Virus record (IMG/VR): IMGVR_UViG_3300025162_000016
Location: 304,759-368,758 of that record
Direction: 5' to 3' (one strand)
Length of the DNA stretch: 64,000 nt
Positions within the stretch are counted from its first letter, which is position 1. Each line of letters opens with the position of its first letter. Made by a program: the position numbers and the translations under genes. Shown piece after piece: positions 21,647-63,739 of the stretch. The notes below the pieces were generated by a model. The model was not told the DNA's origin. It did not search any database and saw only the letters and a list, made by a program, of their open reading frames with translations.

Positions 21647-21658
21647 TTGTTATCATTT

Positions 21659-34814: not shown

Positions 34815-34862
34815 GTGTTGACTTTCTATAAATCCTCTGATAGTATTGGAGGAGTGGAATAA

Positions 34863-35867: not shown

Positions 35868-35885
35868 ACCTAATGTTAAAACCTA

Positions 35886-38800: not shown

Positions 38801-41800
38801 GAACAAGTCTGGTCACAAGTTCGGAATCAAGTAATGTTACAACTCGAATCACATGAATAATCTACTTAAAAACCAAATTTGGGATCAAGTTGAGGCACAA
38901 GTTGAGTTGCAAGTGGGGGATCAAATTTGGGATCGAGTTAGGTCACGAGTTGAGTCACTAATGATGTTACAAATTTGGGATCGAGTTAGGTCACGAGTTG
39001 AGAACCAAGTCTGGTCGCAAGTTAAGGATCAAGTGGGGCAACAAGTTATAAATGAACTAAGGTCGCATGAATAATAAATTAATTAATGATCAAGTTTGGA
39101 ATCAAGTTAGGCAACAAGTCTATTCACAAGTTGAGTTACAAGTTGAGTTACAAGTGCGGTCACAAGTTGGGCAACAAGTTAGGGATCAAGTCTTGATACA
39201 AATCCGGTTACAAATTTGGTCACAGATTCAGTTACAAGTTCGGTCACAAGTCGAGTCAGAAGTAGCAAAACAAGTGTGGTCACAAATTAGAAATCACGTT
39301 ATGTCACAATTAGAATCACATGAATGATATAATAACGAATAAAATCGGGAAACAAGTTCAGTCACAAGTTTGGCAACAAGTTGAGTACCCAATGTTGAAA
39401 CACCTCGTATCACAAGTTACGTCAAGAGGTCGGGATAAAGTTAGGCAACAAGTTAGTAATCAAGTCTGGTCACAAATTAAGTCACAGGTCAATTCACAAG
39501 TTCAGTCACGAGTTGCGTCACAAGTCTGGTCACAAGTCCGGTTACAAGTTTCGTCACAAGTCTGGTTACAAATTTGGCAACAAGTTATAAATGAACTAAT
39601 ATCGCATGAATAATATAATAACGAATAAAATCGGGAAACAAGTTCAGTCACAAGTTAGTTCACAAGTCTGGTCACAACTAGAATTACATGAATAATCAAA
39701 TTAAAGATCAAATTTGGGGTCGAGTTTTGTCACAAGTTTCAGCACAACTTCACCTAATTGATGCTCAAGTCTGGTCACAAGTTAGGTCACAAGTTGAGAA
39801 CCAAGTCTGGTCACAAGTTTCGTCACAAGTTATGTTAAAAGTTGAGTCACAAGTTGAGTCACAAGTTATAAATGAACTGGGGTCGCATGAATAATAAATT
39901 AATTAATGATCAAGTCTGGTCACAAGACTATTCACACATCTATTCACAAGTTCCGTTACGAGTTTGGGTTCAAGTCTGGTCACAAGTCCGGGATCAAGTT
40001 CGGAAACAAGTCTGGCAAGTTGAGGATCAAGTTACGTCACAAGTTTCGTCACAAGTTTGGGATCGAGTCTGGTCACAAGTTCAGTCACAAGCCAATTCAC
40101 AAGTTGAGGCTCAAGTTCGTTCACAAGTCTGGTCACAAGTTATGTCACAAGTTACGTCACAAGTTGATGAACAAGTCTGGTCACAAGTTCGGGATCAAGT
40201 GATGTTACAAGTTCAGTCACGAGTTGCGTCACAAATCTGGTCACAAGTCTGGTCACCAGTCGGGGCACAAGTTTCGTCACAAGTTAGCTCACAAGTTAGC
40301 TCACAAGTTTGGCAACAAGTTGAACAAGTTAGCTCACAAGTTCCGTCACAAATTAGGTCGCACGTTGAGTTACAAGTTAGGAACCGAGTTATAAATGAAC
40401 TAAGATCGCATGAATAATAAATTAATTAATGAACAAGTCTGGTCACAAACTTGGGATCAAGTTGCGGCACAAGTTGTGGATCAAGTTAACTCACAAGTTA
40501 TGTTAAAAGTTGAGTCGGAAGTGGCAGAACAAGTCTGGTCACAAGTTCGGAATCAAATTATGTCACAAGTCTATTCACAAGTTGCGTTACAAGTGCAGGA
40601 TCAAGTTAGTTCACAAGTTAGGAATCAAGTTTGGGATCGAGTAATGTTACAAGTTCGGAATAAAGTTAAGTCACAAGTTCAGTCGCAAGTTTGGGATCGA
40701 GTAATGTTACAAGTTGCGTCACAAGTTATAAATGAACTGGGATCGAATGTATAATAAATTAATTAATGATCAAGTCTGGTTACAAGTTTGGGATCGAGTT
40801 AGGTCGCAAGTTAGTTCACAAATTTGGGATCGAGTCTGGTCACAAGTTAAGTCACAAGTTGCGGCACAAGTTGATTCACAAGTGCGGTCACAAGTAAATA
40901 GTCAAGTTATAGCACAAATTAGAAATAAGCTAAGATCAAATGAGTATTAAATTAATTGATGATCAAGTCTGGTCACAAGTTCAACCAGAAATTTGGGATC
41001 GAGTTAAATCGCCAATGGTGAAACATCTAGTATCACAAGTCACATTACAAGTCACGTTACAAGTTGAGTCACAAGTTATGTCACAAGTTTGGCAACAAAT
41101 TTGGCAACAAGTTTCGTCACAAGTTCGGTCACAACTAGAATCACATGAATAATACATTAATTAATGATCAAGTTTGGCAACAAGTTAGCTCACAAGTTTG
41201 GCAACAAGTTGAACAAGTTAGCTCACAAGTTGCGTCACAGGTTTCGTCACAAGTCAAGGATCCAGTCTGGTCACAAGTTCGGTCACAACTAGAATTATAT
41301 GAATAATAAATTAATTAATGATCACTTTTGGGATCAAGTCTGGTCACAGGTGATATCACAAGCTTCGTTACAAATTGAGTTACAAGTTAGCTCACAAGTT
41401 ATATCACAAGTCGGGTCACAAGTTCGGTCACAAGTTTGGAAGCAAGTTCAGTCACAAGTTAGTAATCAAGTTAGGCAACAAATTATAAATGAACTGGGGT
41501 CGAATGTATAATAAATTAATTAATGATCAAGTTTGGAATCAAGTTAGGCAACAAGTCTATTCACAAGTTGATTCACAAGTTGCGGCACAAATAAATAATC
41601 AGATTAAGTCACAAGTTCAGAATCAAGTTGCGTCACAAGTTTGGAAGCAAGTTCAGTCACAAGTTAGTAATCAAGTTATAGCACAAATTAGAAATGAACT
41701 GGGGTCGAATGTATAATAAATTAATTAATGATCAAGTCTATTCACAAGTGCTGTCACAAGTTTGGGAGCAAGTTGCGTCACAAATAAATAATCAGATTAA

Positions 41801-44800
41801 GTCACAAGTTCAGAATCAAGTGATAGCACAAGTCACGTCACAAGTTTGGGATCAAGTTTCAAATCAAGTTTTGGAACGAATTATATCTCAAGTTTCGGAA
41901 CAAGTTTCGGAACAAGTTGAGTTATACGTTTTGGATCAAGTTAGAGCACATGTAGTGAGTAAACTTTGGGTAAGTAAATAATCAAATATATAATAACTTG
42001 TTACGAATTATGAAGGAGAAAATGATATATCAAGTGTCGAGGGACGTGCAGAATCAAGTGCGGGATAAGGTTTGGAATCAAGTTGAGTTACACGTTTTGG
42101 ATCAAATTTCGTCACAAGTCAATTCACAAGTCAATTCACAAGTCTGGTCACAAGTCTGGTCACAAGTCTGGTCACAAGTGGGGGATCAAGTTCGGTCACA
42201 ATTAGAATCACATGAATAATAAATTAGTTAATGATAAAATCTGGTCACAAATTTGGGATCGAATTAGGTCACAAGTTCAGTCACGAGTTAGCTCACAAGT
42301 TAGCTCACAAGTTTGGCAACAAGTTATGAATCGAGTTACGTCACAAGTTAATGATCAAGTCTATTCACAAGTTATGTCACAAATTTGGGATCGAGTCACG
42401 TCACAAGTTGAGGATCAAGTTGCGGCACAAGTTCGGTCACAACTAGAATTACATGAATAATAATAAATTAGTTAATGATCAAGTCTATTCACAAGTTATG
42501 TCACAAGTTGAGTCACAAGTTTCAACTCAAGTGTCGTCACAAGTTGAGTTGGAAGTTGTGTTACAAGTTGCGGTACGAGTTAGTTCACAAGTTAGGAATC
42601 AAGTTTGGGATCGAGTTAGTTCACAAGTTAGGAATCAAGTTTTGGATCGAGTTAGGTCACAAGTTGATTACCCAATGATGAAACACCTCCTATCACAAGT
42701 TACGTCACAAGTTAGGTCACAAGTTAGGTCACAAGTCTATTCACAAGTCCGGTCACAAGTTAGCTCGGAAGTTTGGAAACAAGTTTCGTCACAAATAGCA
42801 GAACAAGTGCGGTCACAATTAGAATTACATGAATGATATAACTAACTATCAAATTTGGGTTCAAGTTAAGTCACAAGTCTGGTCACAAGTTAAGTCACAA
42901 GTTGAGGATCAAGCTTGGGCACAAGTCACGTCACAAGTAGCAGAACAAGTTTGGGATCAAGTCTGGTCACAAGTTCGGAATCAAATCACGTTACAAGTCA
43001 ATTCACAAGTAGCAGAACAAGTAGCAGAACAAGTGCGGTCACAAATATCTTCCAATGGACAATTTATATAATCAAGTTCAGTCACAAGTTGCATCCCACG
43101 TTGATTCCCAAGTCTGGTCACAAGTTTCAACTCAAGTCTCGTCACAAGTTGAATTAGAAGTGAGGTCGCAAGTCTATTCACAAATTGAGGATCAAGTTCG
43201 TTCACAAGTCAATTCACAAGTTGCGTCACAAGTAGCAGAACAAGTGCGGTCACAAATATCTTCCAATGGACAATTTATATAATCAAATTATTGATCAAGT
43301 TGAGTTACACGTTTTGGATCAAGTTTCGTCACAAGTCTGGTCACAAGTCTGGTCACAAGTCTGGTCACAAGTTGATTCAGAAGTGCGGTCACAAGTTCTG
43401 AATAAAGTTAGGTCACAAGTTTCGTCACAAGTTTGGGATCAAGTTTGGTCACAAGTTAGGGATCAAGTGATGTTACAAGTTTCGTCACAAGTTTGGGATC
43501 AAGTGATGTTACAAGTTGCGTTACAAGTTCTGAATAAAGTTAGGTCACAAGTTGCGGATCAATTGCGGCACAATTAGAATCAAATAAATTATAAAGTAAT
43601 GCGAGGGACAACATAAAAATGGATTTTCCGGATCAAGTAATATTACAAGAGATGGGTAAAATAATGGGACGAGTTAGGTCACAAGTTGCGGATCAAGTTC
43701 GGTCACAAGTGAGGACACAAGTTTGGGATCAAGTTTGGAATCGACTTATTAAAGCTGGTGGATCACAAGTTAAATCAGAAATTGAGTCACAAATATCTTC
43801 CAATGAACAATTTATATAAACAAGTTCAGTCACAAGTAGCAGAACAAGTGCGGTCACAAGTTGATTCACAAGTTGCGACACAAGTTCGAATTCAAATCAA
43901 TTCACAAGTTACGTCACAAGTCTATTCACAAGTTGCGGATCAAGTTTCGGAACAAGTCTGGTCACAAGTCTGGTCACAAGTTTCGCCACAAGTCCATTCA
44001 CAAGTATGGTCACAAGTTCGGTTACAAGTTGCGTTACAAGTTTGGGATCAAGTTAGATCACACGTTGCGGCACAAGTCTATTCACAAGTGCTGTCACAAA
44101 TTAGAGATCAAGTTATAAATAAGCTAAGATCACATGAATAATACATTAATTAATTATCAAACCTATTCACAAGTTTGGGATCGAGTGAGGGGACACGTTG
44201 CGGATCAAATAATGTTACAAGTGATGACTCCATTGATAAAACGAATGGATGAACAAGTTGCGTCACAAGTTTCGTCACAAATTTCGTCACAAGTCACGTC
44301 ACAAAATGAATTTGGGTCGCATGAATAATAGATTAATTAAAGACCAAATCGAGTCACAAATCTATTCACAAGTCACGTCACAAGTTAGGGATCAAGTCTG
44401 GTCACAAGTCACGTCACAAGTAGCAGAACAAGTGAGGTCACAAGTCTGTTCACAAGTTCGAATTCAAGTTAGGTCACAAGTTGCGTTACAAGTTGAGTTA
44501 CAAGTTCGGTTACAAGTAAATGAGCAGATTCGGAATCAAGTTGCGGCACAAGTTATAAATGAACTGGGGTCGAATGTATAATAAATTAATTAAAGACCAA
44601 ATCGAGTCACAAGTTTGGCGACAAGTTGAAGCACAAATCGAGTCACAGGTGGTATACCCAATGTTCGGACACCTCGTATCACAAATTGCGTCACAAGTTT
44701 CATCTCAAGTTATGTCACGAGTTGAGCCACAAGTTAGGACACAAGTGAATGAGCATGTTGCGGATCAATTGCGGTCACAATTAGAATTACATGAATAATA

Positions 44801-45196
44801 AATTAGTTAATGATCAAGTCTATTCACAAGTTTCGACTCAAGTTTCGGAACAAGTCTGGTCACACGTTGTGTCACAAGTTTCGTCACAAGTTGATGATCA
44901 AGTTTGGGATCAAGTTAGATCACACGTTGCGGCACAAGTTAGTTCACAAGTTCGGTCACAACTAGAATTACATGAATAATAATCGAATTATTGATCAAGT
45001 TTCGACTCAAGTTTGGTCACAAGTTTGGGATCAAGTTGAGTCACAAGTTAGCTCACAAGTCTGGTCACAAGTTCGGTTACAAGTTGCGTTACAAGTTAGG
45101 AATCAAGTTTGGTCACAAGTTGCGGCACAAGTTAAGGAAAATGTTGAATCACAAATTAGAAGCCACCTCGCCCGCTCTATTTTGTTTGTTGACTAG
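35886..45196 (+). repeat. Block 2 of (QVxS)n short ORFs (~38 ORFs, ~30-180 aa, mostly overlapping)
   Basis: Successive ORFs mostly joined by 8- or 11-nt start/stop overlaps (ATGAATAA, ATGAATGA, ATGTATAA, ATGAGTATTAA). Confidence 0.9.
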
Positions 45197-45248
45197 TTAT
45201 GGGTTTTGTGGTTGACAAATTGAGGTAGTTGGTGTAGACTATTAAAGC

Positions 45249-45449
45249 ATGAGAACTGCTGAAGAAATAATTAAAGAAAATGGATGGGATGAATATAAGA
45301 CAGTGGCGGAAATTAAAGCCATTCAAGCCGATGCGTGGCAAGACGCCATTAAACACGCAATTTCCATAGCTAAAAGATATAGTAAAGATGATTCATGGGG
45401 TCAGGAAAAAATCATAGTGAAAGAACTCGGTAATCTTCTTGAAAAATAA
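45249..45449 (+). CDS. Hypothetical protein
   Basis: ATG just after TTGACA/TAGACT promoter. Confidence 0.6.
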   Translation: MRTAEEIIKENGWDEYKTVAEIKAIQADAWQDAIKHAISIAKRYSKDDSWGQEKIIVKELGNLLEK

Positions 45450-45654
45450 TATGAATACTGATTATGAACAAGGATGGGATGCTTATATGTCCGGCCTATA
45501 TAAAGAGGATTGCCCACACACAAACAACCTCTCACAAGGTGGAGATTGGTTAGATGGTTGGTGGGCGGCACAAATACAATTGAGAGATTCCAATGTAGTA
45601 GCAGAAAAACCAACACTAAAACCAATACCATGTAAGTGCGGTAAAGAATATTAA
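45439..45654 (+). CDS. Hypothetical protein, possibly truncated by the scaffold insertion
   Basis: YEQGWDAY..G....CP...W..GW motif; stop lies inside the scaffold copy. Confidence 0.55.
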   Translation: MKNNMNTDYEQGWDAYMSGLYKEDCPHTNNLSQGGDWLDGWWAAQIQLRDSNVVAEKPTLKPIPCKCGKEY

Positions 45655-45817
45655 TAAACATAGGTTAATTGACTAACAAAAAGATGAGAATAGAAATATT
45701 CCAGCACGGAGCTTATAGTCCCGAGTGTTTTAAAAACCTAAATTTAGTAAGAATAAATTTCAATAGAACAGGTAACTATATGGTGAAGTGCTGGAACAGA
45801 CCAGTTACTATATCACC
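45640..45817 (+). ncRNA. Putative scaffold RNA copy B (5'-truncated) fused to one CRISPR repeat (45782-45817)
   Basis: Near-identical to 63859-64000, followed by an exact 36-bp repeat. Confidence 0.6.
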
Positions 45818-46117
45818 CAAATGAGTTATATAAACACGAAACGGATGAAGAACGAATTATTCGTATGATAAAAGCTAGATCGGCAGAAGATACATATGCT
45901 TATTGTATCATGAGACTTCAAAATTTAGGACGAATTTGAAAATTTAAAAATATGAGACTTAAACGAAATAACGTGCTTTTGACTAGTATTAGTTTCATTT
46001 TGGCGAGTGTGGTATTGTGGATATCGCCGTCCACAAGTTTCAATGTTGAATTTGCGATTTTTGATTTGAAATTAGCATCGATATTGTTTGCGGCATATCT
46101 GTGCATGGATAAAAAAT

Positions 46118-46612
46118 ATGAAACTAAATAAAATGTATCTAGTATTGGGCGATTCATCCGACGATGGACACGGTAAGTATGAGAAAGTTTTACTTAATAG
46201 TAACGTTAAAGTAGACTCAATTCGGTACGCCTACAAGGCATCATGTAAGCTTACAGGGGTGAGTTTTAATCATAGCACAGACTATACAGAGGTTGGTAAT
46301 AAGAATCAAATTGCGACTAAATATGAGGATGGCGTGCTTCATAAAAAAGTTTTTGATATTCTTGCTAAACATGGGCTTACTAAGGACATGTTGAGAGAAT
46401 GGGACGTGTGCGATTATTTCGAGGAAGGAGATTTTGAAGATGGTCAATTTGGGTTGTATGCAGAAATTTTCGTTAGTCTTTGGATTTGGTTTGTTAAACT
46501 GAGCTTACCTGAGGTAGTAATATTAGAACGTGACATTCCTAAAGAGGTGATTCCGAATATTAATGGCTGTAAAAATCTATCTAGTCAATTTGGTTACGGA
46601 TTATATATTTAA
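46118..46612 (+). CDS. Conserved phage hypothetical protein
   Basis: LGD.S.DGHG...AYKASC..TG; FGYGLY C-terminus. Confidence 0.7.
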   Translation: MKLNKMYLVLGDSSDDGHGKYEKVLLNSNVKVDSIRYAYKASCKLTGVSFNHSTDYTEVGNKNQIATKYEDGVLHKKVFDILAKHGLTKDMLREWDVCDYFEEGDFEDGQFGLYAEIFVSLWIWFVKLSLPEVVILERDIPKEVIPNINGCKNLSSQFGYGLYI

Positions 46613-46624
46613 AATGATTAATAT

Positions 46625-46954
46625 ATGGGAACTAATTTAGACATTAACGAAATTTATAAAATTTTAAGTGAACATAAGTTGTTTGTGGGAAGAATGATTT
46701 CTTCTTATAAAAAATCTCCAAAGGGATGTACATGCGTTTGGAATGGAAACATTGTAACTCGCACATATGGAAAGATTTGGTATGGTGATTTGAATCTAAC
46801 CAAAGAAGGTGATATTTTGAAGGAAATTGCTAATTGTATTGGAGAACCTCTTTATATTCTACGGGAAAGTGATTGTCGTTTTGGATCGGAGAATGATCCA
46901 ATTGATACGATTATTGGTAGAAGTATTTGGAACACAACTCAGAACCTTGTTTAA
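46625..46954 (+). CDS. Conserved phage hypothetical protein
   Basis: GRMIS..K, KIWYGDL.LT, LYILRE.D.RF. Confidence 0.7.
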   Translation: MGTNLDINEIYKILSEHKLFVGRMISSYKKSPKGCTCVWNGNIVTRTYGKIWYGDLNLTKEGDILKEIANCIGEPLYILRESDCRFGSENDPIDTIIGRSIWNTTQNLV

Positions 46955-47023
46955 AAAAGAGCACACATTTTGTTGAAAATCTCGAACTGTTAGAAGAATT
47001 CTCAGAGTCATTATTGAAATAAT

Positions 47024-47248
47024 ATGGGTGAAATTGCTATTGGAGATTTGTTTAAGCATAAGAAATATGGATTTACCGGTAAATTGATTTGCGTTGATCA
47101 TTTCTCCAATATCCATGTAATCCAATCGGCAGATAACCGAGAGCCAAAATATTATTCCGATGAATTATATGAAGGGATAGAATATCCACCAACTCTTACA
47201 TGGAAAGGTCTGGAATATCAGATGGAAGAAGATTTTGAAAAAATATGA
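47024..47248 (+). CDS. Hypothetical protein
   Basis: ORF track. Confidence 0.5.
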   Translation: MGEIAIGDLFKHKKYGFTGKLICVDHFSNIHVIQSADNREPKYYSDELYEGIEYPPTLTWKGLEYQMEEDFEKI

Positions 47249-47434
47249 AAATAAACGACATTATCAGATATCAAAATTATACATCGGATGATCGTAAGTC
47301 ATCGATTAGAAAAATGAGGATAGTAGAGATGCGATTGCTCGGTGACCCCAAAAACCTTACAGAACGTTTTATTGGAGAAACTTTGAGTGGTAAAGATAAA
47401 CAATGGATTTATGAGGATCAAATTGTCAAATAAA

Positions 47435-47791
47435 ATGAAGAATAGAGAAATTAAATTTAGAGTATGGCATCATTCGTTTTCGAGATTCCTGACGCCGGAT
47501 GAATGGTTTCTAGCGTTGGATGGTAAGTTACTATTTACTGATTTTACCACGGATGAATGGAGGATTGTAGATTCGGATTATACTATTCAACAATATACCG
47601 GACTTAAAGATAAAAACGATAAAGAAATCTATGAGGGTGATATTGTTAAAACTGAATTTGGTCATATGTTTAGTAGTAATATTCATGTGGTAGAGTATAT
47701 AAAAAATAGATTTGTCCCCGATGATGTGTGTGATACTGATGGTGTAGAAGTTATCGGGAATATTTTTGAGAATTTAGATTTGGTAAAATAA
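47435..47791 (+). CDS. YopX family protein
   Basis: REIKFRVW..QYTGLKDKN.KEIYEGDI..EVIGNIFEN. Confidence 0.9.
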   Translation: MKNREIKFRVWHHSFSRFLTPDEWFLALDGKLLFTDFTTDEWRIVDSDYTIQQYTGLKDKNDKEIYEGDIVKTEFGHMFSSNIHVVEYIKNRFVPDDVCDTDGVEVIGNIFENLDLVK

Positions 47792-48096
47792 TATGAGTAA
47801 AACGAAATATTACATCAAAATAGTGCTGCCCGAAAATGATCACGGCTCTGTGCTAGGATTAGAACTAACAGAAAAAATCAGGACCGAGTTGGATAATTAT
47901 CTTAACCAAGTGTTCAATAATTTTGAAGTTAAAATAATAACTGAAGTTTCTAGTTCGTAAAATAATGTCTTGAGTCATTTCATTGATTATTAGGTAATTT
48001 ATACCAAATCATAGAAAACTATACCACAAATATAAAAAATTGTCAAGAAGTATCACTCTTTTTGCTCTTTGAGATTTCTAAGCAATATATATTGCT

Positions 48097-48246
48097 ATGA
48101 AAACACCTATATATACAAAAATTGCACAGCGAAACTGGATGGAAAAGCGAAAGAAAGCGGGATATTGCTGGGCTACTTTCTTTACCACCAAGGAGAACGT
48201 AGCTAAATTAAAGGAGTTCTACGCTGAACTCAAAAAGTCCAAATGA
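48097..48246 (+). CDS. Small basic TnpB-associated protein (49 aa, not in track)
   Basis: MKTPIYTKIAQRNWMEKRKKAG...KLKEFYAEL; ATGA overlap with 48243. Confidence 0.65.
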   Translation: MKTPIYTKIAQRNWMEKRKKAGYCWATFFTTKENVAKLKEFYAELKKSK

Positions 48247-49493
48247 TCCGCTCATCAAACCATACAACAAAATTTGCAAATCCTCTCAAACTAAAGAGGT
48301 TGTCCAGATTCGTTGACGAATACAGGCGAGTTGGCCAAATCATTATCGATACTATCTGGGCCAACGGTTATGACAGCTTTATTCCATTAAAGGATCAACT
48401 TAATTGCCCAAAATACCTTGACTACAATCGGTTTGACGTGGAAACAGACATTTCCCCAAGAGCAATGAGTTCGCTCACAACCCAAATATGTGCTGCCCTA
48501 TCAGCATCCACAAAAAAACGAAAGAAACTTCTATATACAAAATCCAAACTAATAGATGAAAATATACCAACAAAATCTATCGATAGACTGTTGACAAAAT
48601 ACATAATCGTAAAACCAGACTGCCGTTACATGAATCCAGAACTTAGTTCCAAATGTAGCGACATCGAATCTGGAAAATCCTTCGACTACTTTCTACGAAT
48701 AAAATGTATCGGTAAATCTTATGGTCACATAAAAATTCCACTAAAACATACCAAAATGAGCCTAAAATGGCTCAAATCAGGAAAACCACTCACATCATAT
48801 TCTTTAACTACATCTTCTATTACACTGAGGTTTGAAATTAAACCTTTACGCACAACCATTGGAACAAAGGTTATTGGTGTTGATCAAGGGATGAAAGACG
48901 TTGCTACTTGTTCTGATTCCCAAACAACCCCCAAAACCGATGCTCATGGACACTCGCTTGAATTTATAATAAACAAACTGTCAAGAAAAAAGAGGGGTAG
49001 CAGAGCATTTGAAAAAACACAGTCTCACAGAAAAAATTTTATTAATTGGTCAATCAATCAATTAAATTTTAATGATGCCAAAGAAATTCGATTGGAAAAA
49101 ATATGGAACATTGGCTACAAAAATCGAACGTCAAGAAAGCTTTCACATTGGACAAACACGTTGATTAGAGATAAAATTATTGGAAAATGCGAAGAACTGG
49201 AGGTTCCAGTCATCGAGCAGGATTCCACTTATCGTTCCCAACGTTGTTTTAATTGCGGATTGGTACGAAAAGCCAATCGGAAAGGTAAATTATACAAATG
49301 TAAGAAATGTGGGTATGAGGCGGATGCTGATTTCAATGCAAGCCTAAACCATAGTATTGATTTGCCTGATATCGATTGGCGGTTTCGTGGTAAAGGACAC
49401 AATCTAGGCAAGGGGTTCCGATGGACTCCTACCGGATTGTTCAACCTTGACGGATCGGAGCTTAGAGTCCCGGTTTCCAACAAACAAGGATAA
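48243..49493 (+). CDS. tnpB: TnpB/Cas12f-like RuvC nuclease
   Basis: IGVDQG, IRLEKI, SQRCFNCG..CKKCG, DADFNASLN. Confidence 0.85.
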   Translation: MIRSSNHTTKFANPLKLKRLSRFVDEYRRVGQIIIDTIWANGYDSFIPLKDQLNCPKYLDYNRFDVETDISPRAMSSLTTQICAALSASTKKRKKLLYTKSKLIDENIPTKSIDRLLTKYIIVKPDCRYMNPELSSKCSDIESGKSFDYFLRIKCIGKSYGHIKIPLKHTKMSLKWLKSGKPLTSYSLTTSSITLRFEIKPLRTTIGTKVIGVDQGMKDVATCSDSQTTPKTDAHGHSLEFIINKLSRKKRGSRAFEKTQSHRKNFINWSINQLNFNDAKEIRLEKIWNIGYKNRTSRKLSHWTNTLIRDKIIGKCEELEVPVIEQDSTYRSQRCFNCGLVRKANRKGKLYKCKKCGYEADADFNASLNHSIDLPDIDWRFRGKGHNLGKGFRWTPTGLFNLDGSELRVPVSNKQG

Positions 49494-49770
49494 TTTTCTA
49501 TAAATTATCTAACTCTACATCATATACTATGGAAAGTTGTTACGTATGCAAACGTGCTAAATCCAACCAAGAAAATCCATATATTTGTAATACTTGTAGT
49601 AAATTAGGATATATAGAAAATAAATGTTTACCAATCGGATTTTTTGATTTTGTTTGTTGGAAACCATTCGTCAAACTCCCATTAGGCAATTGAATTAATA
49701 TGCAAAGAGAAATTAAAATTAGAGTATGAAGAATTAAAGGTTTTTTGTTTATAATTACATATTTATTTAT

Positions 49771-51870
49771 ATGATAATAAAATTAAATGAAATAAAAAGT
49801 GTAATACGGGAACTCCTCTTAGAACTTTTTAATAAAGACGCCTCCAAAACCGCATTAGCTAAAGCGGGAAAATCAAAATATTTTGATAAAATTATTGATC
49901 TTGATCCAACTAAAGATAAAAATGCAGTTTATTCCATTAAATTAACTAAATTTTTTCTTGAACCCAGATCTCAATCCGATGATCAATTCTTAGAATTACT
50001 CAAATCTTATTTTGAAAAATATCTTCTTTTTAAAAATAGAAAACTATTAAAAGGTAAAGACGCTGATCTCAATTCAATAAAATCTTTCAAAGATTTTCAT
50101 AATTTAATTGATGCAACCGAAGCGGAACTCAAAAGAAATAAACCCGTCGATGTCGTTGCTAAAATTGCGGAACCGGAGAAAGTTGATGATCAGGGAAGCA
50201 TAATAGAAGCATTAGGTAAGAAGATAGATAAGAAGGATATTACCTATGTTGATCAAAATGTTATTGTTGTTCGGGCAGATAATTCATCGAAATCGAAGAG
50301 ATATGGTGGTGGATTTAGTAACTGGTGTACGGCGAGAAAGTCCGGAAATTTATTTTATAATTATCGATTTGAAGAGCCACCACAAACGATGTTTTACGTA
50401 TATTTTTTAAATAAAGATAAGAATGATAATGAATTAGTGTTGCATTTCGGAGTTGATGAAGATAGAGACATTTCTTATACCGACAGATTAAACAAAGAAA
50501 GTAGACAAACATTAGATTGGTTGGTGAGAAAGTTTCCCGAATTAAAACCTGCGTTGGCTTCTAATGCATTTAAACTAGTTCCATTGACAGCGACAGAGAT
50601 AAGAGTTAAAAAGTTACCAGATACGTTATCGGTGGAACAATTTAATGGATTAAGTTACGATGAGAAAGAGATGTGGTTTCAGTCTGGAGATAGAGAGGTT
50701 ACATTAGATGTATGGAATTTGATGGATGAGAATTTCAAGAATTTGTATGTGAGAGAATTTTCAGATAGGGAGGATGATATTGATAATGAGATATTTAATA
50801 TAATAAGAGGGACAAAGTATGAAAAATTATATATGGAAGGAATACAGGAGAGGATAGAAGATGGGATATCCGAATCGGAGACACATACTATAGATCAATG
50901 TAGTCCGCATGAGTTGGAATTTATCAAGACCAGTCCAGGGTTGATTAATAAATTAAGTGATTATACTGTTTATAGTTTATTAGATCAATCACAGAATAAA
51001 GACGAGATGGCTCGGATATTGGGTCCGGAGAATATAAATAAATTAAATAGTGATAATGTTTATAAAATATTAGATTATTCACAGAATAAAGACGAGATGG
51101 CTCGGATATTGGGTCCGGAAAATATAAATAAATTAAGTGATGATAATGTTTATAGTTTATTACAAAATTCATCAAATAAAGACGAAATGTCCAAAATTAT
51201 TTTACAATATAAAGGAAATAATTTAAGTGATAATAATGTTTATAATTTATTACACTATTCATCAAATAAAAACGAGATGGCTAAAATACTTGGTAGTGAA
51301 AATATAAATAAATTAAGTGATAATACTGTTTATTATTTATTATACTATTTACTGAATAAAGACGAGATGGCTAAACTTATTTTACAATATAAAGGAAATA
51401 ATTTAAGTGATAATAATGTTTATAATTTATTACACTATTCACAGAATAAAGACGAGATTGCTAAGATATTGGGTCCGGGGAATATAAATAAATTAAATAG
51501 TGATAATGTTTATAAAATATTAGATTATTCACAGAATAAAGACGAGATGGCTCGGATATTGGGTCCGGAAAATATAAATAAATTAAGTAATAATAATGTT
51601 TATTATTTATTACACTCTTCACTGAATAAAGAAGAGATGGCTAAAATACTTGGTAGTGAAAATATAAATAAATTAAGTGATAATACTGTTTATTATTTAT
51701 TATACTATTCACTGAATAAAGAAGAGATGGCTAAGATTTTGATGAATTATTTAAGTTCCGATAGGATAGAGCAATTTAAATTAAAATTTCCGCAACAAGC
51801 GAAGTGGTTTAATGCGTCACCTACTCCAATTAGGGAGCGTCATTCCAATTATAAATCCTATTACAGTTGA
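49771..51870 (+). CDS. Paralog of 21659-23941 with a different set of ~30-aa repeats
   Basis: Shared N-domain; repeats NKDEMAxILGxENINKLxDxxVYxLL. Confidence 0.85.
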   Translation: MIIKLNEIKSVIRELLLELFNKDASKTALAKAGKSKYFDKIIDLDPTKDKNAVYSIKLTKFFLEPRSQSDDQFLELLKSYFEKYLLFKNRKLLKGKDADLNSIKSFKDFHNLIDATEAELKRNKPVDVVAKIAEPEKVDDQGSIIEALGKKIDKKDITYVDQNVIVVRADNSSKSKRYGGGFSNWCTARKSGNLFYNYRFEEPPQTMFYVYFLNKDKNDNELVLHFGVDEDRDISYTDRLNKESRQTLDWLVRKFPELKPALASNAFKLVPLTATEIRVKKLPDTLSVEQFNGLSYDEKEMWFQSGDREVTLDVWNLMDENFKNLYVREFSDREDDIDNEIFNIIRGTKYEKLYMEGIQERIEDGISESETHTIDQCSPHELEFIKTSPGLINKLSDYTVYSLLDQSQNKDEMARILGPENINKLNSDNVYKILDYSQNKDEMARILGPENINKLSDDNVYSLLQNSSNKDEMSKIILQYKGNNLSDNNVYNLLHYSSNKNEMAKILGSENINKLSDNTVYYLLYYLLNKDEMAKLILQYKGNNLSDNNVYNLLHYSQNKDEIAKILGPGNINKLNSDNVYKILDYSQNKDEMARILGPENINKLSNNNVYYLLHSSLNKEEMAKILGSENINKLSDNTVYYLLYYSLNKEEMAKILMNYLSSDRIEQFKLKFPQQAKWFNASPTPIRERHSNYKSYYS

Positions 51871-55969: not shown

Positions 55970-56102
55970 AATTATTAATAACGGTGACTAGTTCACCTCA
56001 TGCTTGGTAATTTAAAAAAAAAATAGCGAATTGATAAATCGCAAATGCTGGCTCTAATCCAGTCCAAGTATATTTTAATTTTTTTCTGATATAGTTAGCC
56101 CT

Positions 56103-56576: not shown

Positions 56577-56767
56577 GCTTTCTATCAGTAACGGGATGTA
56601 CAACTACTTCCCCTACAGTAAATTTACCTCCGGTTGAATTTACCGAGTGAACTATATTTATATTTTGTCATATCCCCGCCGCCTCTAGGCTGTACAGTAA
56701 CGACAGTTAATGCGTAATTGCGGGGATTTTATATTGGACCATCGTAACTCCAACTGGTACTATTAGA

Positions 56768-57030
56768 ATAGTTACCTGTTCTATTGAAATTTATTCTCGC
56801 TAAATTTAGGTTTTTAAAACACTCGGGACTATAAGCTCCGTGCTGAAAATATTTCTATTCTCATCTTTTTGTTAGCCAATTAACCTATGTTTATTAATAT
56901 TCTTCACCGGAAAAATATATTAAAACAAGCGATTTATTGACAGAATTTCACTTCGGTTGCAGTTTTAATGTTGACGCAGTGGACACCACCTACTCGTCAA
57001 CCCACAACTGTTTATTTTATTAGAACTGAA
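56768..57030 (-). ncRNA. Putative scaffold RNA copy C (full length, no CRISPR repeat)
   Basis: Reverse complement of 63740-64000; promoter at ~57034-57061. Confidence 0.6.
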
Positions 57031-57104
57031 GTTACTATAGCAGAATTTCTATAAATGTCAACATTTTTCAATAAAATGTTTGCTCTTTTCTGATACTTAT
57101 AAAC

Positions 57105-57605
57105 ATGAAAACAAAATTTATATTTCTTATAATAAGTTTCTTACTGTTGGTAGGATGTAACACCGTTCCTAGTTTTACTTCTAATAATATTCTTAATTTA
57201 AGAGTGGTAGATGCTTCTCAAAACATACTGAGAGGTGGTCAACCAGATGCGAAGGGATTTATATATTTGAAATCACTTGGTATAACTAATATTATTAAAC
57301 TTAATTTAGAAGATAATGAGGATGCGGAGGCAACTGCATTAGGAATGACGGTGGTTTATATTCCTATTAACACATATGATCAGGTAATTCATTTGGAAAA
57401 GTGGAAGTTCGAGGTTGCGGTAATTGCTATAACTCCGAACACTTTCATTCATTGTGCGCATGGACAAGATCGAACTGGGTTGGTTGTAGCGGGATATAGG
57501 ATGGCGAATGGAATGTCTAAAGCAGATGCAGAAAAAGAAATGCTGGCGAATGGATTTCACAAAGAATTGATTGGGTTATGGGGATTTTTTAAAAAAATAA
57601 ATTAA
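57105..57605 (+). CDS. Tyrosine/dual-specificity phosphatase lipoprotein
   Basis: HCAHGQDRTG P-loop; lipobox LLVGC. Confidence 0.85.
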   Translation: MKTKFIFLIISFLLLVGCNTVPSFTSNNILNLRVVDASQNILRGGQPDAKGFIYLKSLGITNIIKLNLEDNEDAEATALGMTVVYIPINTYDQVIHLEKWKFEVAVIAITPNTFIHCAHGQDRTGLVVAGYRMANGMSKADAEKEMLANGFHKELIGLWGFFKKIN

Positions 57606-57638
57606 TGATTTATCTTTTTCTGTTGATATTTAAGATAT

Positions 57639-59357
57639 ATGACAGAAAAACAATCACTCCCATCAAGCGTTTATAATTGGAAGAGACAAAAGCCAGATTC
57701 TCGTGATTATAAATTTGCAGAAATACCTTCGGTGAAACGATTAAAAGTAACAACTCCACCACCGGTTGTTAATTTACGAAAATGGTGTTCTGAAGTAGAA
57801 AATCAAAAATCTTTAGGTAGTTGTTTTACCGGCGATACTTTAATTCCTCTTTTGAATGGAAAGATAGCTACACTGAAAGAACTTACAGATGGGATGTATG
57901 GGAAAACTTTTTGGGTATATGGAAATAAAAATGGAAGAATGGTTCCTGCGTTAGCATCCGCATCTCTTACACAGTATATCGCACCCATTTATAATGTCAC
58001 ATTAGATAATGGGAGAACAATAAAATGTACTGCTGATCATCAGTTTTTGATGCGAGATGGTAATTACAAAAAAGCAATGGAATTAGTATCTGGGGATAGT
58101 TTAATGTCATTTAGAAGAAAATATAATAAATTGGGATATGAGTATGTTTTTTGCCACAGTGACCACAAATATCATCTTACACATTGGTTAGTCGGAAGTT
58201 ATATACATGATTATTCTGTTAATAAAAATGGAGTAGAAGTGATACATCATAAGGATTTTATTAAAAATAATAATACTCCGGAAAATTTGGTAGGAATGAC
58301 AATACAAGAACATTCAATATATCAAAATAAAACGGCGGAATGTAAATTAAAACGTTTTATCGCAGCGAAAAATAGATGGAAAGATATAACGCCGGAAGCT
58401 ATGAGTCGTGTTGTAGATTCCGCAGAAATACGTTTGGGGGCAGTGGGAACACGAAGTCAGATAGCAAAAACAGCAAACGAGGTATTTCTTAAATGTGGAA
58501 ATATTTCTAAAGAACAATGGGAAACGACGGACGTAACAAAACGATTTAAGTTTGAAACGGCGATGAAATATTTTGGAAACCAAGACGAGTTATTGATTGC
58601 TGCACAAAATTATAATCATAAAGTCGTATCGGTCATTAATAGTAATACATCCGAAGATGTTTATTGTCTCACGGTACCAGATACTCAAAATTTTGCACTT
58701 AATGATGGAGTTTATGTTCATAATTGTACCGGCCAGGCGTGGGTGGGTTTAATGGAGTGGCATGAGAATTTCATGGGAAGAGGAGGAAAGGCATTTCAAA
58801 ATCTTAGTCGGTTGTTTGTTTATTATAATGAACGGGAACTTGAAGGAACCATCAATGAGGATGCCGGTGCCGAATTAAGAAGTGGAGCAAAAGCATTGGC
58901 TACGTGGGGGGTTTGTTATGAAAAAAGTTGGCCTTATAACATTGATACTTTCACACAAAAACCAAGTCCAATATGTTATCAGGATGGAGCTATTCATAAA
59001 ATTAATAGTTATTATTCTATCAGTACATTTAATCATCTTAAAATGTGTTTGGCAAACAATTTGCCGGTGGTATTTGGATTTATGGTATATTCGAGTTTTG
59101 ATTCCGATGTGGTTGCTAAAACCGGTATAGCTTCTATGCCAGATATTAAAAACGAGGAATTGCTGGGGGGACACGCCGCAATGATTGTGGGATATAATAA
59201 TTATGAGAAGCGATTTTTAGTAAGAAATTCGTGGGGGAAAAATTGGGGACTTAAAGGAATTAATGCCGGTTATTTTACGCTTCCCTACGATTATGTGGCT
59301 AATCCCAATCTTGCCAGTGATTTTTGGACGGTGGTTCGTATTGTCGAAGACGCATGA
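57639..59357 (+). CDS. C1 (papain) family cysteine peptidase interrupted by an intein
   Basis: Q..LGS|C, LSRLFVYYNER, GGHA..IVGY, VRNSWG..WG..GYF. Confidence 0.9.
   Translation: MTEKQSLPSSVYNWKRQKPDSRDYKFAEIPSVKRLKVTTPPPVVNLRKWCSEVENQKSLGSCFTGDTLIPLLNGKIATLKELTDGMYGKTFWVYGNKNGRMVPALASASLTQYIAPIYNVTLDNGRTIKCTADHQFLMRDGNYKKAMELVSGDSLMSFRRKYNKLGYEYVFCHSDHKYHLTHWLVGSYIHDYSVNKNGVEVIHHKDFIKNNNTPENLVGMTIQEHSIYQNKTAECKLKRFIAAKNRWKDITPEAMSRVVDSAEIRLGAVGTRSQIAKTANEVFLKCGNISKEQWETTDVTKRFKFETAMKYFGNQDELLIAAQNYNHKVVSVINSNTSEDVYCLTVPDTQNFALNDGVYVHNCTGQAWVGLMEWHENFMGRGGKAFQNLSRLFVYYNERELEGTINEDAGAELRSGAKALATWGVCYEKSWPYNIDTFTQKPSPICYQDGAIHKINSYYSISTFNHLKMCLANNLPVVFGFMVYSSFDSDVVAKTGIASMPDIKNEELLGGHAAMIVGYNNYEKRFLVRNSWGKNWGLKGINAGYFTLPYDYVANPNLASDFWTVVRIVEDA
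57822..58724 (+). mobile_element. Intein (301 aa) with HNH homing endonuclease
   Basis: Starts CFTGDT, block B CTADH, IHHKDF.K.NN.PENL, ends VYCLTV...VHN|C. Confidence 0.9.
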
Positions 59358-59893
59358 AAATAGCGTTTTATAAAGGAACTAGTTGGTTTAGTAAAGCAAT
59401 CATGCGAATTTCCCGTGGGGGTTATTCTCATGCGGCGGTTCAATTAAACGACGGAACCATTGTTGAAGCGGGTGTAAAAAATGGGGTATGTCTGAGAAAA
59501 AGTTTATTGGACGACGTGGATATTAATACTACGGTCGATGTATTTGATGTTCAAACTACGCCGGAAGAAGATGAAATTATTTGTGATTTCTTGATTCGAC
59601 AAATGGGGAAGGGGTATGATTTCTGGAATATAATTGGGTTTGTATTATATTCATCTAAAGAAGGAAGAAAAGGATATGATCGGTGGTTTTGTAGTGAATT
59701 GGTAGTGGCGGCTTTTCGACAAGCCGGAATCAATCTACTCACACGAGTTGACGCATGGAAAATATCACCCACGATTTTATCTTATAGTCCTCTCCTAAAA
59801 AGCGGACAGAGAATGCAGATTACAAAAAGTAAACGATTCGGTGGCATAAAACACTCAAATTCAATACATACGACAACTGAAAACTTAGGATAA
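59354..59893 (+). CDS. Permuted papain-like NlpC/P60 (YiiX/YebB-like) protein
   Basis: YSHAA..EA, GKGYD, WFCSELV, ISP. Confidence 0.85.
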   Translation: MKIAFYKGTSWFSKAIMRISRGGYSHAAVQLNDGTIVEAGVKNGVCLRKSLLDDVDINTTVDVFDVQTTPEEDEIICDFLIRQMGKGYDFWNIIGFVLYSSKEGRKGYDRWFCSELVVAAFRQAGINLLTRVDAWKISPTILSYSPLLKSGQRMQITKSKRFGGIKHSNSIHTTTENLG

Positions 59894-59976
59894 TAGTTTA
59901 TTTGCGGGCACAAGGACATCATTTTAATGGTTTTTGAATAATTTGAACTATTTATAGGATGAACTATAGATAAAAT

Positions 59977-61368: not shown

Positions 61369-61499
61369 TTTAAACACTCATTATAAAATCAAAGACAAGG
61401 CGTTAGTAAAATAACGCCTTTTCTTTTTTGTAACATAATCGTAACATAGATTCATCAATTTCGTTTGCGGTTCTTCATAGTTATTTGCAAATTAAAATT

Positions 61500-62186: not shown

Positions 62187-62192
62187 ATTAAT

Positions 62193-63068: not shown

Positions 63069-63097
63069 GCGGCAATTATCATTTTGTTTCTATTTAT

Positions 63098-63308: not shown

Positions 63309-63313
63309 TAAAT

Positions 63314-63688: not shown

Positions 63689-63739
63689 CAATGTCAAATT
63701 TTGATGTTGACATTTATAGAAATTCTGCTATAGTAATTC

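What the first reader, a model, noticed from the sequence alone, without database searches (positions are those of the whole stretch)
48097..49493. Orphan TnpB/Cas12f-like nuclease without visible IS605 ends: candidate effector for the scaffold and CRISPR RNAs
Seen: 416 aa with an intact RuvC D-E-D and Zn finger. Unlike the other two tnpB genes, I see no subterminal hairpins and no transposase. It is 2.4 kb from scaffold copy B. Established: type V effectors arose repeatedly from TnpB. The link to the arrays is pure inference.
Basis: inference. Interest (0 to 1): 0.6.

Follow-up and report, generated by a model that had tools for sequence, protein, structure and literature searches.

The report
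Transposase-less IS607 TnpB element in phage
The "orphan" nuclease gene belongs to a small, recently mobile 1.55-kb IS607-type element that carries its own guide-RNA module, while the phage's CRISPR arrays belong to a separate Cas12-plus-Cas3 locus, so the gene is an ordinary selfish RNA-guided nuclease and not a hidden CRISPR effector.

Summary
The ORF is real: window 48243-49493, 416 aa, with an intact D214/E285/D363 triad and a CxxC..CxxC zinc finger. Its predicted fold is closest to AsCas12f and TnpB.

The gene does have ends. Metagenome contigs show an empty-site allele that joins 47967 to 49514. The same 1.55-kb unit, 98.6-98.8% identical, sits in at least two other phage contexts. All insertions lie at GTCT, and the element ends in CTCT.

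The protein nests among TnpBs that follow serine-recombinase genes (IS607 type). Three paralogs in this 369-kb phage keep that tnpA. A covariation-supported hairpin in the last 40 nt of the ORF, a terminal hairpin and an AACTCT end form a cis omegaRNA/right-end module. The predicted guide starts at 49517.

The CRISPR arrays belong to a 1003-aa Cas12-like protein paired with Cas3, just upstream of the window. Distant homologs of that protein keep both Cas3 and covarying repeats.

The "scaffold" does share the omegaRNA/right-end module (covariance model, E about 3e-6). However, its junctions (GTAT...CTAT) and left end match a sibling IS607 lineage (paralog p37), so it looks like a protein-less derivative of that lineage.

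For the scaffold it is only weakly open.

The parts
47967..47970 (+). GTCT target motif at the left junction. It is the predicted TAM and contains the shared crossover nucleotides.
   Evidence: GTCT precedes the element in the window, in L049, in L050 and in an X6 contig. It is also present in the empty-site allele (...AATAATG TCT ACATCAT...). The autonomous relatives p67, L031 and L027 have AGTCT, AGTCT and GGTCT at the same place.
47971..48096 (+). Left end (LE) of the element, about 126 nt.
   Evidence: Identity with L049 and L050 starts at 47965-47967, and the flanks to the left are unrelated. Loose ends of the X6, X7 and X8 contigs fall at 47964/47965.
48011..48022 (+). LE motif ATAGAAAACTAT, a putative serine-transposase binding motif. 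Its reverse complement, TTTTCTAT, is the loop of the right-end hairpin.
   Evidence: p67 and L031 carry AAATATAGAAAAATATTG, and L027 carries TTTTATAGAAAAATTTAG, 20-25 nt inside their left ends. That this is a binding site is inference.
48018..48046 (-). Outward-facing sigma-70-like promoter inside the LE (TTGACA, 17 nt, TATAGT, with TG).
   Evidence: Consensus scan: 11 of 12 matches. This is the same promoter type as upstream of the tmRNA and the scaffolds. Function is untested.
48081..48096 (.). Perfect 16-nt palindrome AGCAATATATATTGCT that abuts the ATG of the 49-aa ORF. It may be an operator.
   Evidence: Sequence and a self-reverse BLAST hit. The operator role is inference.
48097..48246 (+). 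49-aa ORF carried by the element. It overlaps the tnpB start by ATGA.
   Evidence: The protein is identical in L049 and L050. There is one paralog at window 17851-18006(-) (38% identity, E 2e-4). It has no family hit. There is a weak MazE-like lead only.
48243..49493 (+). tnpB, 416 aa, an RNA-guided nuclease of the IS607-associated clade (P0001).
   Evidence: Purifying selection: 11 synonymous against 2 non-synonymous changes versus L049.
49453..49475 (+). omegaRNA hairpin 1, inside the last 40 nt of the ORF.
   Evidence: 96% of cells are paired and 4 pairs have changes on both sides. The covariation score is 0.562, against 0.203 in shuffles (0 of 500 reach it) and at most 0.168 when the partners are slid.
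49489..49509 (+). Terminal ('guide-adaptor') hairpin of the right end, overlapping the stop codon.
   Evidence: MFE and centroid folds. An equivalent hairpin of different sequence is present in 12 relatives.
49510..49516 (+). Right-end terminus TAACTCT.
   Evidence: Homology with p67 stops at 49517. Identity with L049 and L050 stops at 49516/49515. Contig loose ends fall at 49515/49516. The clade consensus is AACT[C/G/A]T.
49517..49536 (+). Predicted guide template, and target in element-free alleles (starts ACATCATATAC...).
   Evidence: Its position directly 3' of the scaffold end follows the TnpB/IS607 paradigm. The sequence differs in each insertion context. The guide length is assumed.

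Best explanation
The gene is the RNA-guided nuclease of a compact, non-autonomous IS607-family element (window about 47971-49516, 1546 bp). The element has replaced its serine-recombinase tnpA with a 49-aa ORF.

Proposed mechanism:
1. The tnpB transcript carries a cis omegaRNA. Its 3' module is hairpin 1 (49453-49475), a terminal hairpin (49489-49509) and the end ...AACUCU (49516). The adjoining flank, from 49517, serves as the guide.
2. The TnpB-omegaRNA complex is predicted to cut DNA in which a GTCT-type TAM sits directly next to that flank sequence. That is the element-free allele, found in co-infecting related phages or created by excision.
3. Recombinational repair then re-installs or spreads the element (homing and retention).
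4. Transposition to new GTCT sites is probably done in trans by a serine transposase of a sister element, such as p67 in the same genome. That element has a nearly identical right end, the same GTCT junction and the same ATAGAAAA end motif.

Shown: the ORF and its catalytic residues, the fold, the clade, the element boundaries, the empty site, the multiple insertion contexts, purifying selection, and the conserved, covarying RNA hairpin.

Inferred: omegaRNA expression and its 5' end, the identity of the TAM, cleavage activity, trans-mobilisation, and the role of the 49-aa protein.
For: 1. Boundaries and mobility.
- Contigs in runs X6 and X8 join 47967 to 49514. They skip 1546 nt, and 'TCT' fits on both sides.
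- The same unit occurs at 98.6-98.8% identity in L049 and L050, with unrelated flanks on both sides. Two further flanks are seen as loose ends.

2. IS607 signature.
- Every insertion is at GTCT and the element ends in CTCT, so the same TCT/CT sits at both junctions and there is no target-site duplication.
- This matches the published core-dinucleotide and TAM logic of IS607. In the published C. botulinum (Cbo) IS607 element the TAM is TGGG and the scaffold ends in UCGG (bioRxiv 10.1101/2023.11.20.567912).

3. Clade.
- The gene is sister to (L031, p67) with 99/94 support, inside a 14-member clade (100/100). Nine members of that clade directly follow a resolvase-type tnpA.
- Three paralogs in this genome have that tnpA with an ATGA overlap.

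4. Cis omegaRNA.
- DNA homology with p67 runs 24 nt past the stop codon and then ends.
- Hairpin 1 covaries.
- Model R1 scores the locus at 76.5 bits.

5. Function retained.
- The D-E-D triad and the zinc finger are intact.
- The AF2 model has pLDDT 90. The best PDB matches are AsCas12f (E 1e-16), ISFba1 TnpB (3.5e-13) and ISDra2 TnpB (3e-11).
- Synonymous against non-synonymous changes are 11:2 and 11:7.

6. Literature.
- Most tnpB genes lack tnpA and are thought to be mobilised in trans (bioRxiv 10.1101/2023.03.14.532601).
Against: - No RNA data exist. No RNA run holds the locus, so the omegaRNA, its 5' end and its abundance are unverified.
- The fold of the 150-nt region is not more stable than shuffled sequence (z = -1.3).
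- Rfam has no matching family.
- The left end shares only a short motif with the left ends of autonomous relatives, with no BLAST-level similarity. Trans-mobilisation is therefore plausible but unproven.
- The TAM rests on four insertion sites and one empty site.
- The empty-site allele rests on single low-depth contigs (depth about 3) from two runs of one study.
- No plus-strand promoter was found in front of the 49-aa ORF and tnpB.
- The scaffold tail is about as similar to this gene's tail (63%) as to p37's (66%). Cross-use of scaffold RNA cannot be excluded.
Confidence: 0.75

Rival explanations
1. One reading: the gene is a domesticated, Cas12f-like effector. It is loaded in trans with the dispersed scaffold RNAs and/or crRNAs from the phage's CRISPR arrays.
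For: - The 3' 79 nt of every scaffold copy match the omegaRNA/right-end model of this TnpB clade end to end (42-44 bits, E 3e-6 to 7e-6). An independent genuine IS607 right end scores 46.6 bits.
- Scaffolds have their own strong promoter and fold better than shuffled sequence (z = -2.96).
- Copies A and B are followed directly by a CRISPR repeat.
- The protein's closest solved structures are CRISPR-associated Cas12f proteins.
- Protein-less elements (PATEs) that supply omegaRNAs in trans are an accepted idea.
Against: - The arrays have a dedicated effector locus. A Cas12-like 1003-aa protein and Cas3 lie beside one array, and homologs at 55-58% identity keep Cas3 and arrays with compensatory repeat changes.
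- Model R1 does not hit the CRISPR repeats.
- Near-identical copies of this element, and 20 relatives' loci, have no repeat or scaffold nearby.
- The gene is mobile, not immobilised.
- Scaffold junctions are GTAT...CTAT, and the scaffold left end matches p37 in register (16 of 24; 5e-5 of random 24-mers do as well). The predicted TAM therefore differs from this gene's GTCT.
- Only 9 nt of the scaffold are complementary to the repeat.
Confidence: 0.1
2. The 49-aa ORF plus tnpB is a self-sufficient two-gene homing or addiction cassette. The small protein would act as regulator or antitoxin. The cassette would spread only by nuclease-triggered recombination between co-infecting phages, with no transposase involved.
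For: - The ATGA coupling and the identical 49-aa protein in all three copies.
- A 16-nt palindrome lies at its start codon.
- There is a weak MazE-like lead.
- Another clade member (L034) has a 59-aa RHH-like ORF in the same position.
- A TnpB plus DNA-binding-protein toxin-antitoxin idea exists in the literature (PMC13565253).
- Free-standing homing nucleases are common in phages.
Against: - Three or more unrelated flanks have base-precise junctions at the same GTCT motif. This argues for site-specific recombination, not homology-driven copying.
- The 49-aa and 59-aa ORFs are unrelated.
- The 49-aa ORF has no family assignment.
Confidence: 0.12
3. The gene is a decaying relic of an IS607 insertion with no remaining activity.
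For: It has no tnpA, it scores below the curated cut-off of the TnpB model (75 against 100 bits), and no plus-strand promoter was detected.
Against: - The reading frame and all catalytic and zinc residues are intact.
- Synonymous changes are in strong excess.
- Near-identical copies occur at several sites and there is a present/absent polymorphism, which indicates recent movement.
- The structure model is confident.
Confidence: 0.03

Closest known systems
IS607-family TnpB elements (for example the C. botulinum CboIStron TnpB with the serine transposase TnpA_S)
   Same: - The TnpB nests among serine-recombinase-associated homologs.
- There is no target-site duplication, and the same short core sits at both junctions.
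- The target motif left of the LE resembles the last bases of the RE but differs at one upstream position (GTCT against CTCT here; TGGG against TCGG in Cbo).
- The omegaRNA overlaps the 3' end of tnpB and ends at the RE.
   Different: - This copy has no tnpA. It carries a 49-aa ORF of unknown function instead.
- The target motif is GTCT rather than G-rich.
- There is no group I intron.
- It resides in, and moves between, huge freshwater phages.
Non-autonomous tnpB-only IS200/IS605 elements and PATEs (Meers et al., bioRxiv 10.1101/2023.03.14.532601)
   Same: - It is a tnpB-only element with conserved ends, presumably mobilised in trans.
- In the same genome there are protein-less derivatives (the 'scaffolds') that keep only the ends and an omegaRNA-like module.
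   Different: - The chemistry and ends are serine-recombinase (IS607) type, not Y1/HUH with subterminal hairpins.
- The protein-less derivatives carry their own strong promoter and about 190 nt of extra structured RNA.
AsCas12f / type V-F Cas12f
   Same: - It gives the best sequence and structure match among solved structures (phmmer E 1e-17 over the RuvC/zinc-finger half; Foldseek E 1e-16 over the full length).
- It has a similar size (416 against 422 aa) and the same catalytic residues.
   Different: - There is no adjacent CRISPR array and no tracrRNA with a real anti-repeat.
- The gene is mobile and its guide comes from the flanking DNA.
- Overall identity is only 17-19%.
TranC (transposon-CRISPR intermediates)
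   Same: It is a TnpB-lineage nuclease in a genome that also holds omegaRNA-like RNAs next to CRISPR repeats (scaffold copies A and B).
   Different: - No array is associated with this gene or its relatives.
- The scaffold-repeat junctions are explained by insertion of a p37-type element next to a solitary repeat.
- The repeats belong to a different Cas12+Cas3 system.

Membership tests
IS607-family TnpB element | TnpB with a RuvC D-E-D triad and a zinc ribbon, and a TnpB/Cas12f fold | tested here: met
   (D214, E285, D363; C335/338/353/356). AF2 pLDDT is 90, and Foldseek gives AsCas12f at 1e-16 and ISFba1/ISDra2 TnpB at 3.5e-13 and 3e-11.
IS607-family TnpB element | Serine-recombinase tnpA directly upstream of tnpB | tested here: not met
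   The upstream gene is a 49-aa ORF with no family hit. Sister copies p67, p44 and p37, and 6 of 10 external relatives, do have the tnpA. This copy is therefore filed as a non-autonomous derivative, not a complete IS607.
IS607-family TnpB element | Phylogenetic placement among serine-recombinase-associated TnpBs | tested here: met
   ML tree: sister to (L031, p67) with 99/94 support. The clade of 14 has 100/100 support and is separate from the nine other TnpBs of this genome that were included as outgroup. No Cas12f or Cas12n reference sequences were available for the tree.
IS607-family TnpB element | Discrete ends without target-site duplication, with the same core nucleotides at both junctions and a precise donor joint | tested here: met
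   There is an empty-site allele with a shared TCT, and three sequenced insertion contexts at GTCT...CTCT.
IS607-family TnpB element | omegaRNA that overlaps the 3' end of tnpB and ends at the RE, followed by the guide | tested here: inconclusive
   The structure and boundary are supported. No RNA data exist, there is no Rfam match, and the 5' end is unknown.
IS607-family TnpB element | [quoted passage not shown] | not testable with these tools
   This needs a TAM-library or plasmid-interference assay.
Type V-F CRISPR effector (Cas12f) | Conserved association with a CRISPR array | tested here: not met
   The nearest array ends at window 29152, about 19 kb away. No repeat lies within 2.5-3 kb of any copy or relative.
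Type V-F CRISPR effector (Cas12f) | A tracrRNA with an anti-repeat that pairs to the repeat | tested here: not met
   The scaffold has only a 9-nt complement to the repeat (sequence). Model R1 gives no hit on the repeats.
Type V-F CRISPR effector (Cas12f) | Immobilised, meaning not part of a transposable unit | tested here: not met
   There is a present/absent polymorphism and there are multiple insertion sites.
TranC (transposon-CRISPR intermediate) | A TnpB-like nuclease that uses guides from an adjacent CRISPR array as well as an omegaRNA-type guide | tested here: not met
   There is no adjacent array. The arrays co-vary with the Cas12-like P0002 and Cas3.
IS200/IS605 TnpB element | A Y1 (HUH) TnpA and/or subterminal imperfect palindromes of the IS605 type | tested here: not met
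   No Y1 tnpA is present. The ends are unlike the shared 3' ends (...CCCTTTAGGGTAGG...) of the window's other two tnpB genes. The protein falls in a different clade in the tree.

The most novel reading that the evidence does not exclude
TnpBs of this IS607 clade have four copies in the phage, including this one. They may be loaded in trans with the promoter-driven, stand-alone scaffold RNAs, which exist as five copies. Two of those copies read directly into a CRISPR repeat of the phage's Cas12+Cas3 system. That would give a natural multi-guide TnpB system, or a cross-talk between a transposon nuclease and a CRISPR locus, and would be a live snapshot of how omegaRNA modules detach from tnpB and meet CRISPR repeats.
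Probability: 0.12. Interest if true: 0.75.

Novelty: new member of a known kind. Interest (0 to 1): 0.35.

Why it matters
The finding removes a tempting but wrong CRISPR assignment. It shows, with population data, a tnpA-less IS607-type TnpB element that is moving now among huge freshwater phages.

It gives a ready-made test system: defined ends, an empty site, a predicted TAM (GTCT) and a predicted guide. The nuclease's closest solved relatives are the compact editors of the AsCas12f group.

It also explains the genome's puzzling 'scaffold' RNAs as protein-less IS607 derivatives. If these are expressed, they would be IS607 counterparts of the omegaRNA-bearing PATEs known for IS605.

Tried and rejected
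- Megablast of the locus against the phage collection found no match.
- Smith-Waterman alignment of the scaffold against the 3' regions of all 15 tnpB genes gave scores no better than shuffled sequence. The 17-nt motif I first noticed is therefore not significant on its own. Only the covariance model settled the question.
- tblastn and blastn of the scaffold's 5' 190 nt against tnpB genes found nothing beyond a 12-aa stretch at the hairpin. The origin of that part remains unknown.
- The scaffold is not a simple left-end-plus-right-end copy of p67 or p44.
- Rfam, in both gathering and E-value modes, has no family for the scaffold or for the tnpB 3' region.
- Related IMG/VR contigs from the same sample do not cover this locus.
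- No RNA-seq run holds the locus.
- The 49-aa ORF has no PHROG hit, no similarity to the 59-aa ORF of L034, and only a weak MazE-like lead in the ESM Atlas.
- Spacers and predicted guides have no second target in the phage genome. The exception is a 2-mismatch hit of one scaffold flank, which turned out to be a remnant of a tnpA gene.
- One padloc call failed because of a coordinate slip and was not needed afterwards.
- A tree against Cas12f and Cas12n references could not be built, because no such sequences are available as session objects.
- Not run: complex prediction and the large representative protein search. No claim here depends on them.
Full report
**Setting.** The window is the last 64 kb of a complete 368,758-bp virus record. 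The record has a 7,102-bp direct terminal repeat and comes from freshwater and lake metagenomes. It has the marks of a huge phage. Genes lie almost only on the plus strand. There is a tmRNA (20136-20529), an intein-bearing protein and a PstS-like gene.

**The observation.**
- The ORF at 48243-49493 encodes 416 aa (P0001).
- It matches TnpB models: NF040570 at 75 bits (below the curated cut-off of 100), and phrog_12300 and phrog_506 at about 1e-21.
- Aligned to AsCas12f, its RuvC residues D214, E285 and D363 and the four zinc-finger cysteines are in place. They are invariant or nearly invariant in 46 homologs.
- An AlphaFold model built on those homologs has mean pLDDT 90.
- Its best Foldseek matches are AsCas12f (E 1e-16), OsCas12f, CnCas12f1 and SpCas12f1, followed by ISFba1 TnpB (3.5e-13) and ISDra2 TnpB (3e-11).
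- 'TnpB/Cas12f-like, catalytically intact' is therefore correct.
Its stop codon overlaps the tnpB start in ATGA.

**It belongs to the IS607 type.**
- The genome holds about 15 TnpB-like ORFs. Four form one clade: this gene and paralogs at genome 11646 (p67, 67% identity), 181044 (p44) and 76732 (p37).
- Each of the three paralogs directly follows a resolvase-type tnpA of 198-202 aa, with an overlapping start. For p67 this tnpA matches phrog_6620 'transposase' at E 1.6e-52.
- The protein has more than 1000 database relatives, 47-69% identical and 400-440 aa long.
- In sampled contexts most relatives follow a PF00239 resolvase.
- In a maximum-likelihood tree the window gene is sister to (L031, p67) with 99/94 support. 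It sits inside a 14-member clade (100/100) in which nine members have the serine recombinase.

**It has ends and it moves.**
- DNA similarity to p67 covers only 48255-49517, that is tnpB plus 24 nt.
- I laid metagenome contigs on 45300-50500. In runs X6 and X8 a contig joins 47967 to 49514. It skips 1546 nt, and three letters (TCT) fit on both sides. This is an empty-site allele.
- Other contigs carry the element at 95-99% identity but run into unrelated sequence exactly at 47964/47965 and at 49515/49516.
- Members of the protein's 90% cluster led to two sequenced contexts, L049 and L050. There the same 1550-nt unit is 98.8% and 98.6% identical and sits in unrelated flanks.
- Every left junction reads GTCT followed by TGAGTC..., and the element ends in ...TAACTCT (TAACTCC in L050). 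The empty site reads ...AATAATG-TCT-ACATCAT....
- This is the IS607 pattern: no target duplication, the same core nucleotides at both junctions, and a target or TAM motif that resembles the right-end terminus but differs at one upstream base. In the published C. botulinum (Cbo) IS607 element the pair is TGGG and TCGG.
- The autonomous relatives p67, L031 and L027 also have (A/G)GTCT at their left junction. They share a left-end motif, ATAGAAAA(A)TAT. This element keeps that motif at 48011-48022, and its reverse complement is the loop of the right-end hairpin.
- Between copies, tnpB shows 11 synonymous against 2 non-synonymous changes, and 11 against 7.
- I conclude that this is a recently active, non-autonomous IS607 derivative. 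It is most likely moved in trans by a sister serine transposase. That last point is inference, supported by the general finding that most tnpB genes lack tnpA.

**Its own guide-RNA module.**
- Thirteen clade members were aligned at the right end. They share a hairpin inside the last 25-60 nt of the ORF, a second terminal hairpin of variable sequence, and the terminus AACT(C/G/A)T.
- For hairpin 1 (window 49453-49475), 96% of cells are paired and four pairs change on both sides. The covariation score is 0.562. Shuffles average 0.203 (0 of 500 reach the observed value), and slid controls reach at most 0.168.
- By the TnpB paradigm the guide is the flank from 49517. It differs in each insertion context.
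- Expression could not be checked, because no RNA run holds the locus.

**The scaffold link.**
- My first impression came from a shared 17-mer, which was not significant by local alignment.
- I then built a covariance model from 11 genuine tnpB tails, with no scaffold included (R1). It finds all scaffold copies end to end: window 25615-25693, 45701-45779, 56846-56768(-) and 63921-63999, plus the 237-kb copy. Scores are 42-44 bits and E-values 3e-6 to 7e-6. The best background hit scores 16 bits.
- An independent IS607 right end, in L051, scores 46.6 bits.
- So the scaffold's 3' 79 nt are a homolog of this clade's omegaRNA/right-end module.
- The details, however, point to another partner. Full-length scaffolds are about 330-nt units with a TTGACA-17-TATAGT promoter. 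Their left junction is GTAT and their terminus is CTAT, which matches the right-end terminus and the putative GTAT left junction of p37.
- The first 24 nt after GTAT in copy A match p37's putative left end in register at 16 of 24 positions. Only 5e-5 of random genome 24-mers do as well.
- The hairpin shares p37's A.A mismatch and the following AGTGT.
- Scaffolds thus look like protein-less, PATE-like derivatives of the p37-type IS607, with a predicted GTAT TAM. This gene's element uses GTCT.
- The CRISPR repeat that follows copies A and B is best read as the flank of an insertion next to a solitary repeat. B is a 5'-truncated duplicate of A's junction.
- Cross-binding of scaffold RNA by this TnpB cannot be excluded. 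Tail identity is 63% to this gene and 66% to p37.

**Who serves the arrays.**
- The genome has four arrays of a 36-nt repeat and 36 spacers, with no self-targets.
- Next to the array at genome 297365-298344 lies Cas3 (758 aa; PADLOC Cas3c at 1.2e-88). Divergent from it is a 1003-aa protein (P0002) with a C-terminal RuvC/TnpB-like domain. It ends 830 nt before the window starts.
- Its best solved relatives are crRNA-only phage-type Cas12 proteins (Cas12j19, Cas12X; E 3e-7).
- It has only three distant homologs (55-58% identity). All are divergent from a Cas3-like helicase.
- Arrays or solitary repeats at those loci are homologous to this phage's repeat. They carry compensatory changes in both the inner hairpin and the terminal stem.
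- That conserved triad assigns the arrays to P0002 plus Cas3, not to the 416-aa TnpB.
- Copies and relatives of the TnpB elsewhere have no such repeats nearby.

**Verdict.**
- The object is real and intact. It is a new member of a known kind: a tnpA-less IS607-family TnpB element with a cis omegaRNA module, caught in the act of moving among huge phages.
- The proposed role as effector of the CRISPR arrays is refuted.
- The proposed link to the scaffold is real at the level of homology. It is better explained by common descent from IS607 right ends, with p37 as the likelier protein partner.
- Still open: the function of the 49-aa ORF, the outward promoter in the left end, and whether any TnpB uses the scaffold RNAs in trans.

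Noticed in passing
L020:8525-13929 (genome 298524-303928, just upstream of the window): A Cas3 (758 aa) lies divergent from a 1003-aa Cas12-like protein, next to a 14-repeat array. The pairing with a Cas3-like helicase and with homologous, covarying 36-nt repeats is conserved in the only three distant homologs (L051-L053). I did not find a class 2 effector paired with Cas3 in the few papers I consulted.
   Followed up: partly
window 25505-25693 (A), 45639-45779 (B), 57092-56768 minus strand, 63707-63999 (C); also L004: The 'scaffold' is a unit of about 330 nt. It has its own TTGACA-17-TATAGT promoter, about 190 nt of structured RNA (z = -2.96) and an IS607 right-end/omegaRNA-like 3' module. 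Its junctions are GTAT...CTAT. It looks like a protein-less IS607 derivative of the p37 lineage. Copy A has an internal deletion and copy B lacks the promoter.
   Followed up: partly
window 2325-2449, 5137-5309, 6432-6545, 6977-7012, 10012-10047, 25696-25731, 45782-45817; genome 12987, 229885, 282075, 282812, 304154, 304355: Solitary, often slightly degenerate copies of the CRISPR repeat (AGTGAAG...CACT variant) are scattered in intergenic regions. They could be single-guide units, RNA-processing sites or regulatory sites for the Cas12-like protein.
   Followed up: no
genome 1-7102 = 361657-368758 (window 56899-64000): The 7,102-bp terminal repeat starts inside one scaffold copy and ends inside another, inverted, copy. 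The repeat may therefore reflect recombination or an assembly break at these elements.
   Followed up: no
window 48018-48046 (minus strand): A near-consensus promoter (11 of 12 matches, with TG) lies inside the element's left end. It fires outward, antisense to the upstream phage genes, and its -10 box overlaps the ATAGAAAACTAT end motif.
   Followed up: no
window 47784-47929: The empty-site contigs also lack 146 nt upstream of the element, with a 10-nt repeat at the edges. This removes most of a small phage ORF and is a second indel polymorphism at this locus.
   Followed up: no
window 18040-18525: The ORF in front of the first tnpB (18519-19664) is HNH/endonuclease VII-like (phrog_1035, 1e-14), not a Y1 transposase. 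A paralog of the 49-aa ORF lies just upstream on the other strand (17851-18006).
   Followed up: no
genome 361508-361530 (window about 56750-56772, minus strand): The flank directly 3' of the minus-strand scaffold copy is an antisense remnant of a serine-transposase HTH region (..PTGTI..). It matches p67's tnpA at 20 of 22 positions, which suggests past rearrangement between IS607 copies.
   Followed up: partly
genome 12919-13022 (L014): The autonomous paralog p67 is followed, 68 nt after its right end, by a solitary CRISPR repeat. An 11-nt string (TCTATTAAACA) is identical at its left and right junctions.
   Followed up: no
window 32000-45200: About 13 kb are filled with dozens of small ORFs built from a 12-nt (4-aa) periodic repeat (consensus TCACAAGTTNGG). 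The family is large and unexplained.
   Followed up: no
window 21647-23941 and 49771-51870: Two paralogous proteins (764 and 699 aa) are 86% identical at the DNA level in their N-terminal region and have seven to nine 30-aa tandem repeats. Neither has a family hit. One lies directly downstream of the element.
   Followed up: no
window 56001-56071: Rfam calls a tRNA here (43 bits), which ARAGORN did not report.
   Followed up: no
L034:2825-3004: A clade member in a 332-kb contig has a 59-aa RHH/NikA-like ORF in place of tnpA. It overlaps the tnpB start but is unrelated to the 49-aa ORF here. Small DNA-binding-type ORFs may replace tnpA recurrently.
   Followed up: partly
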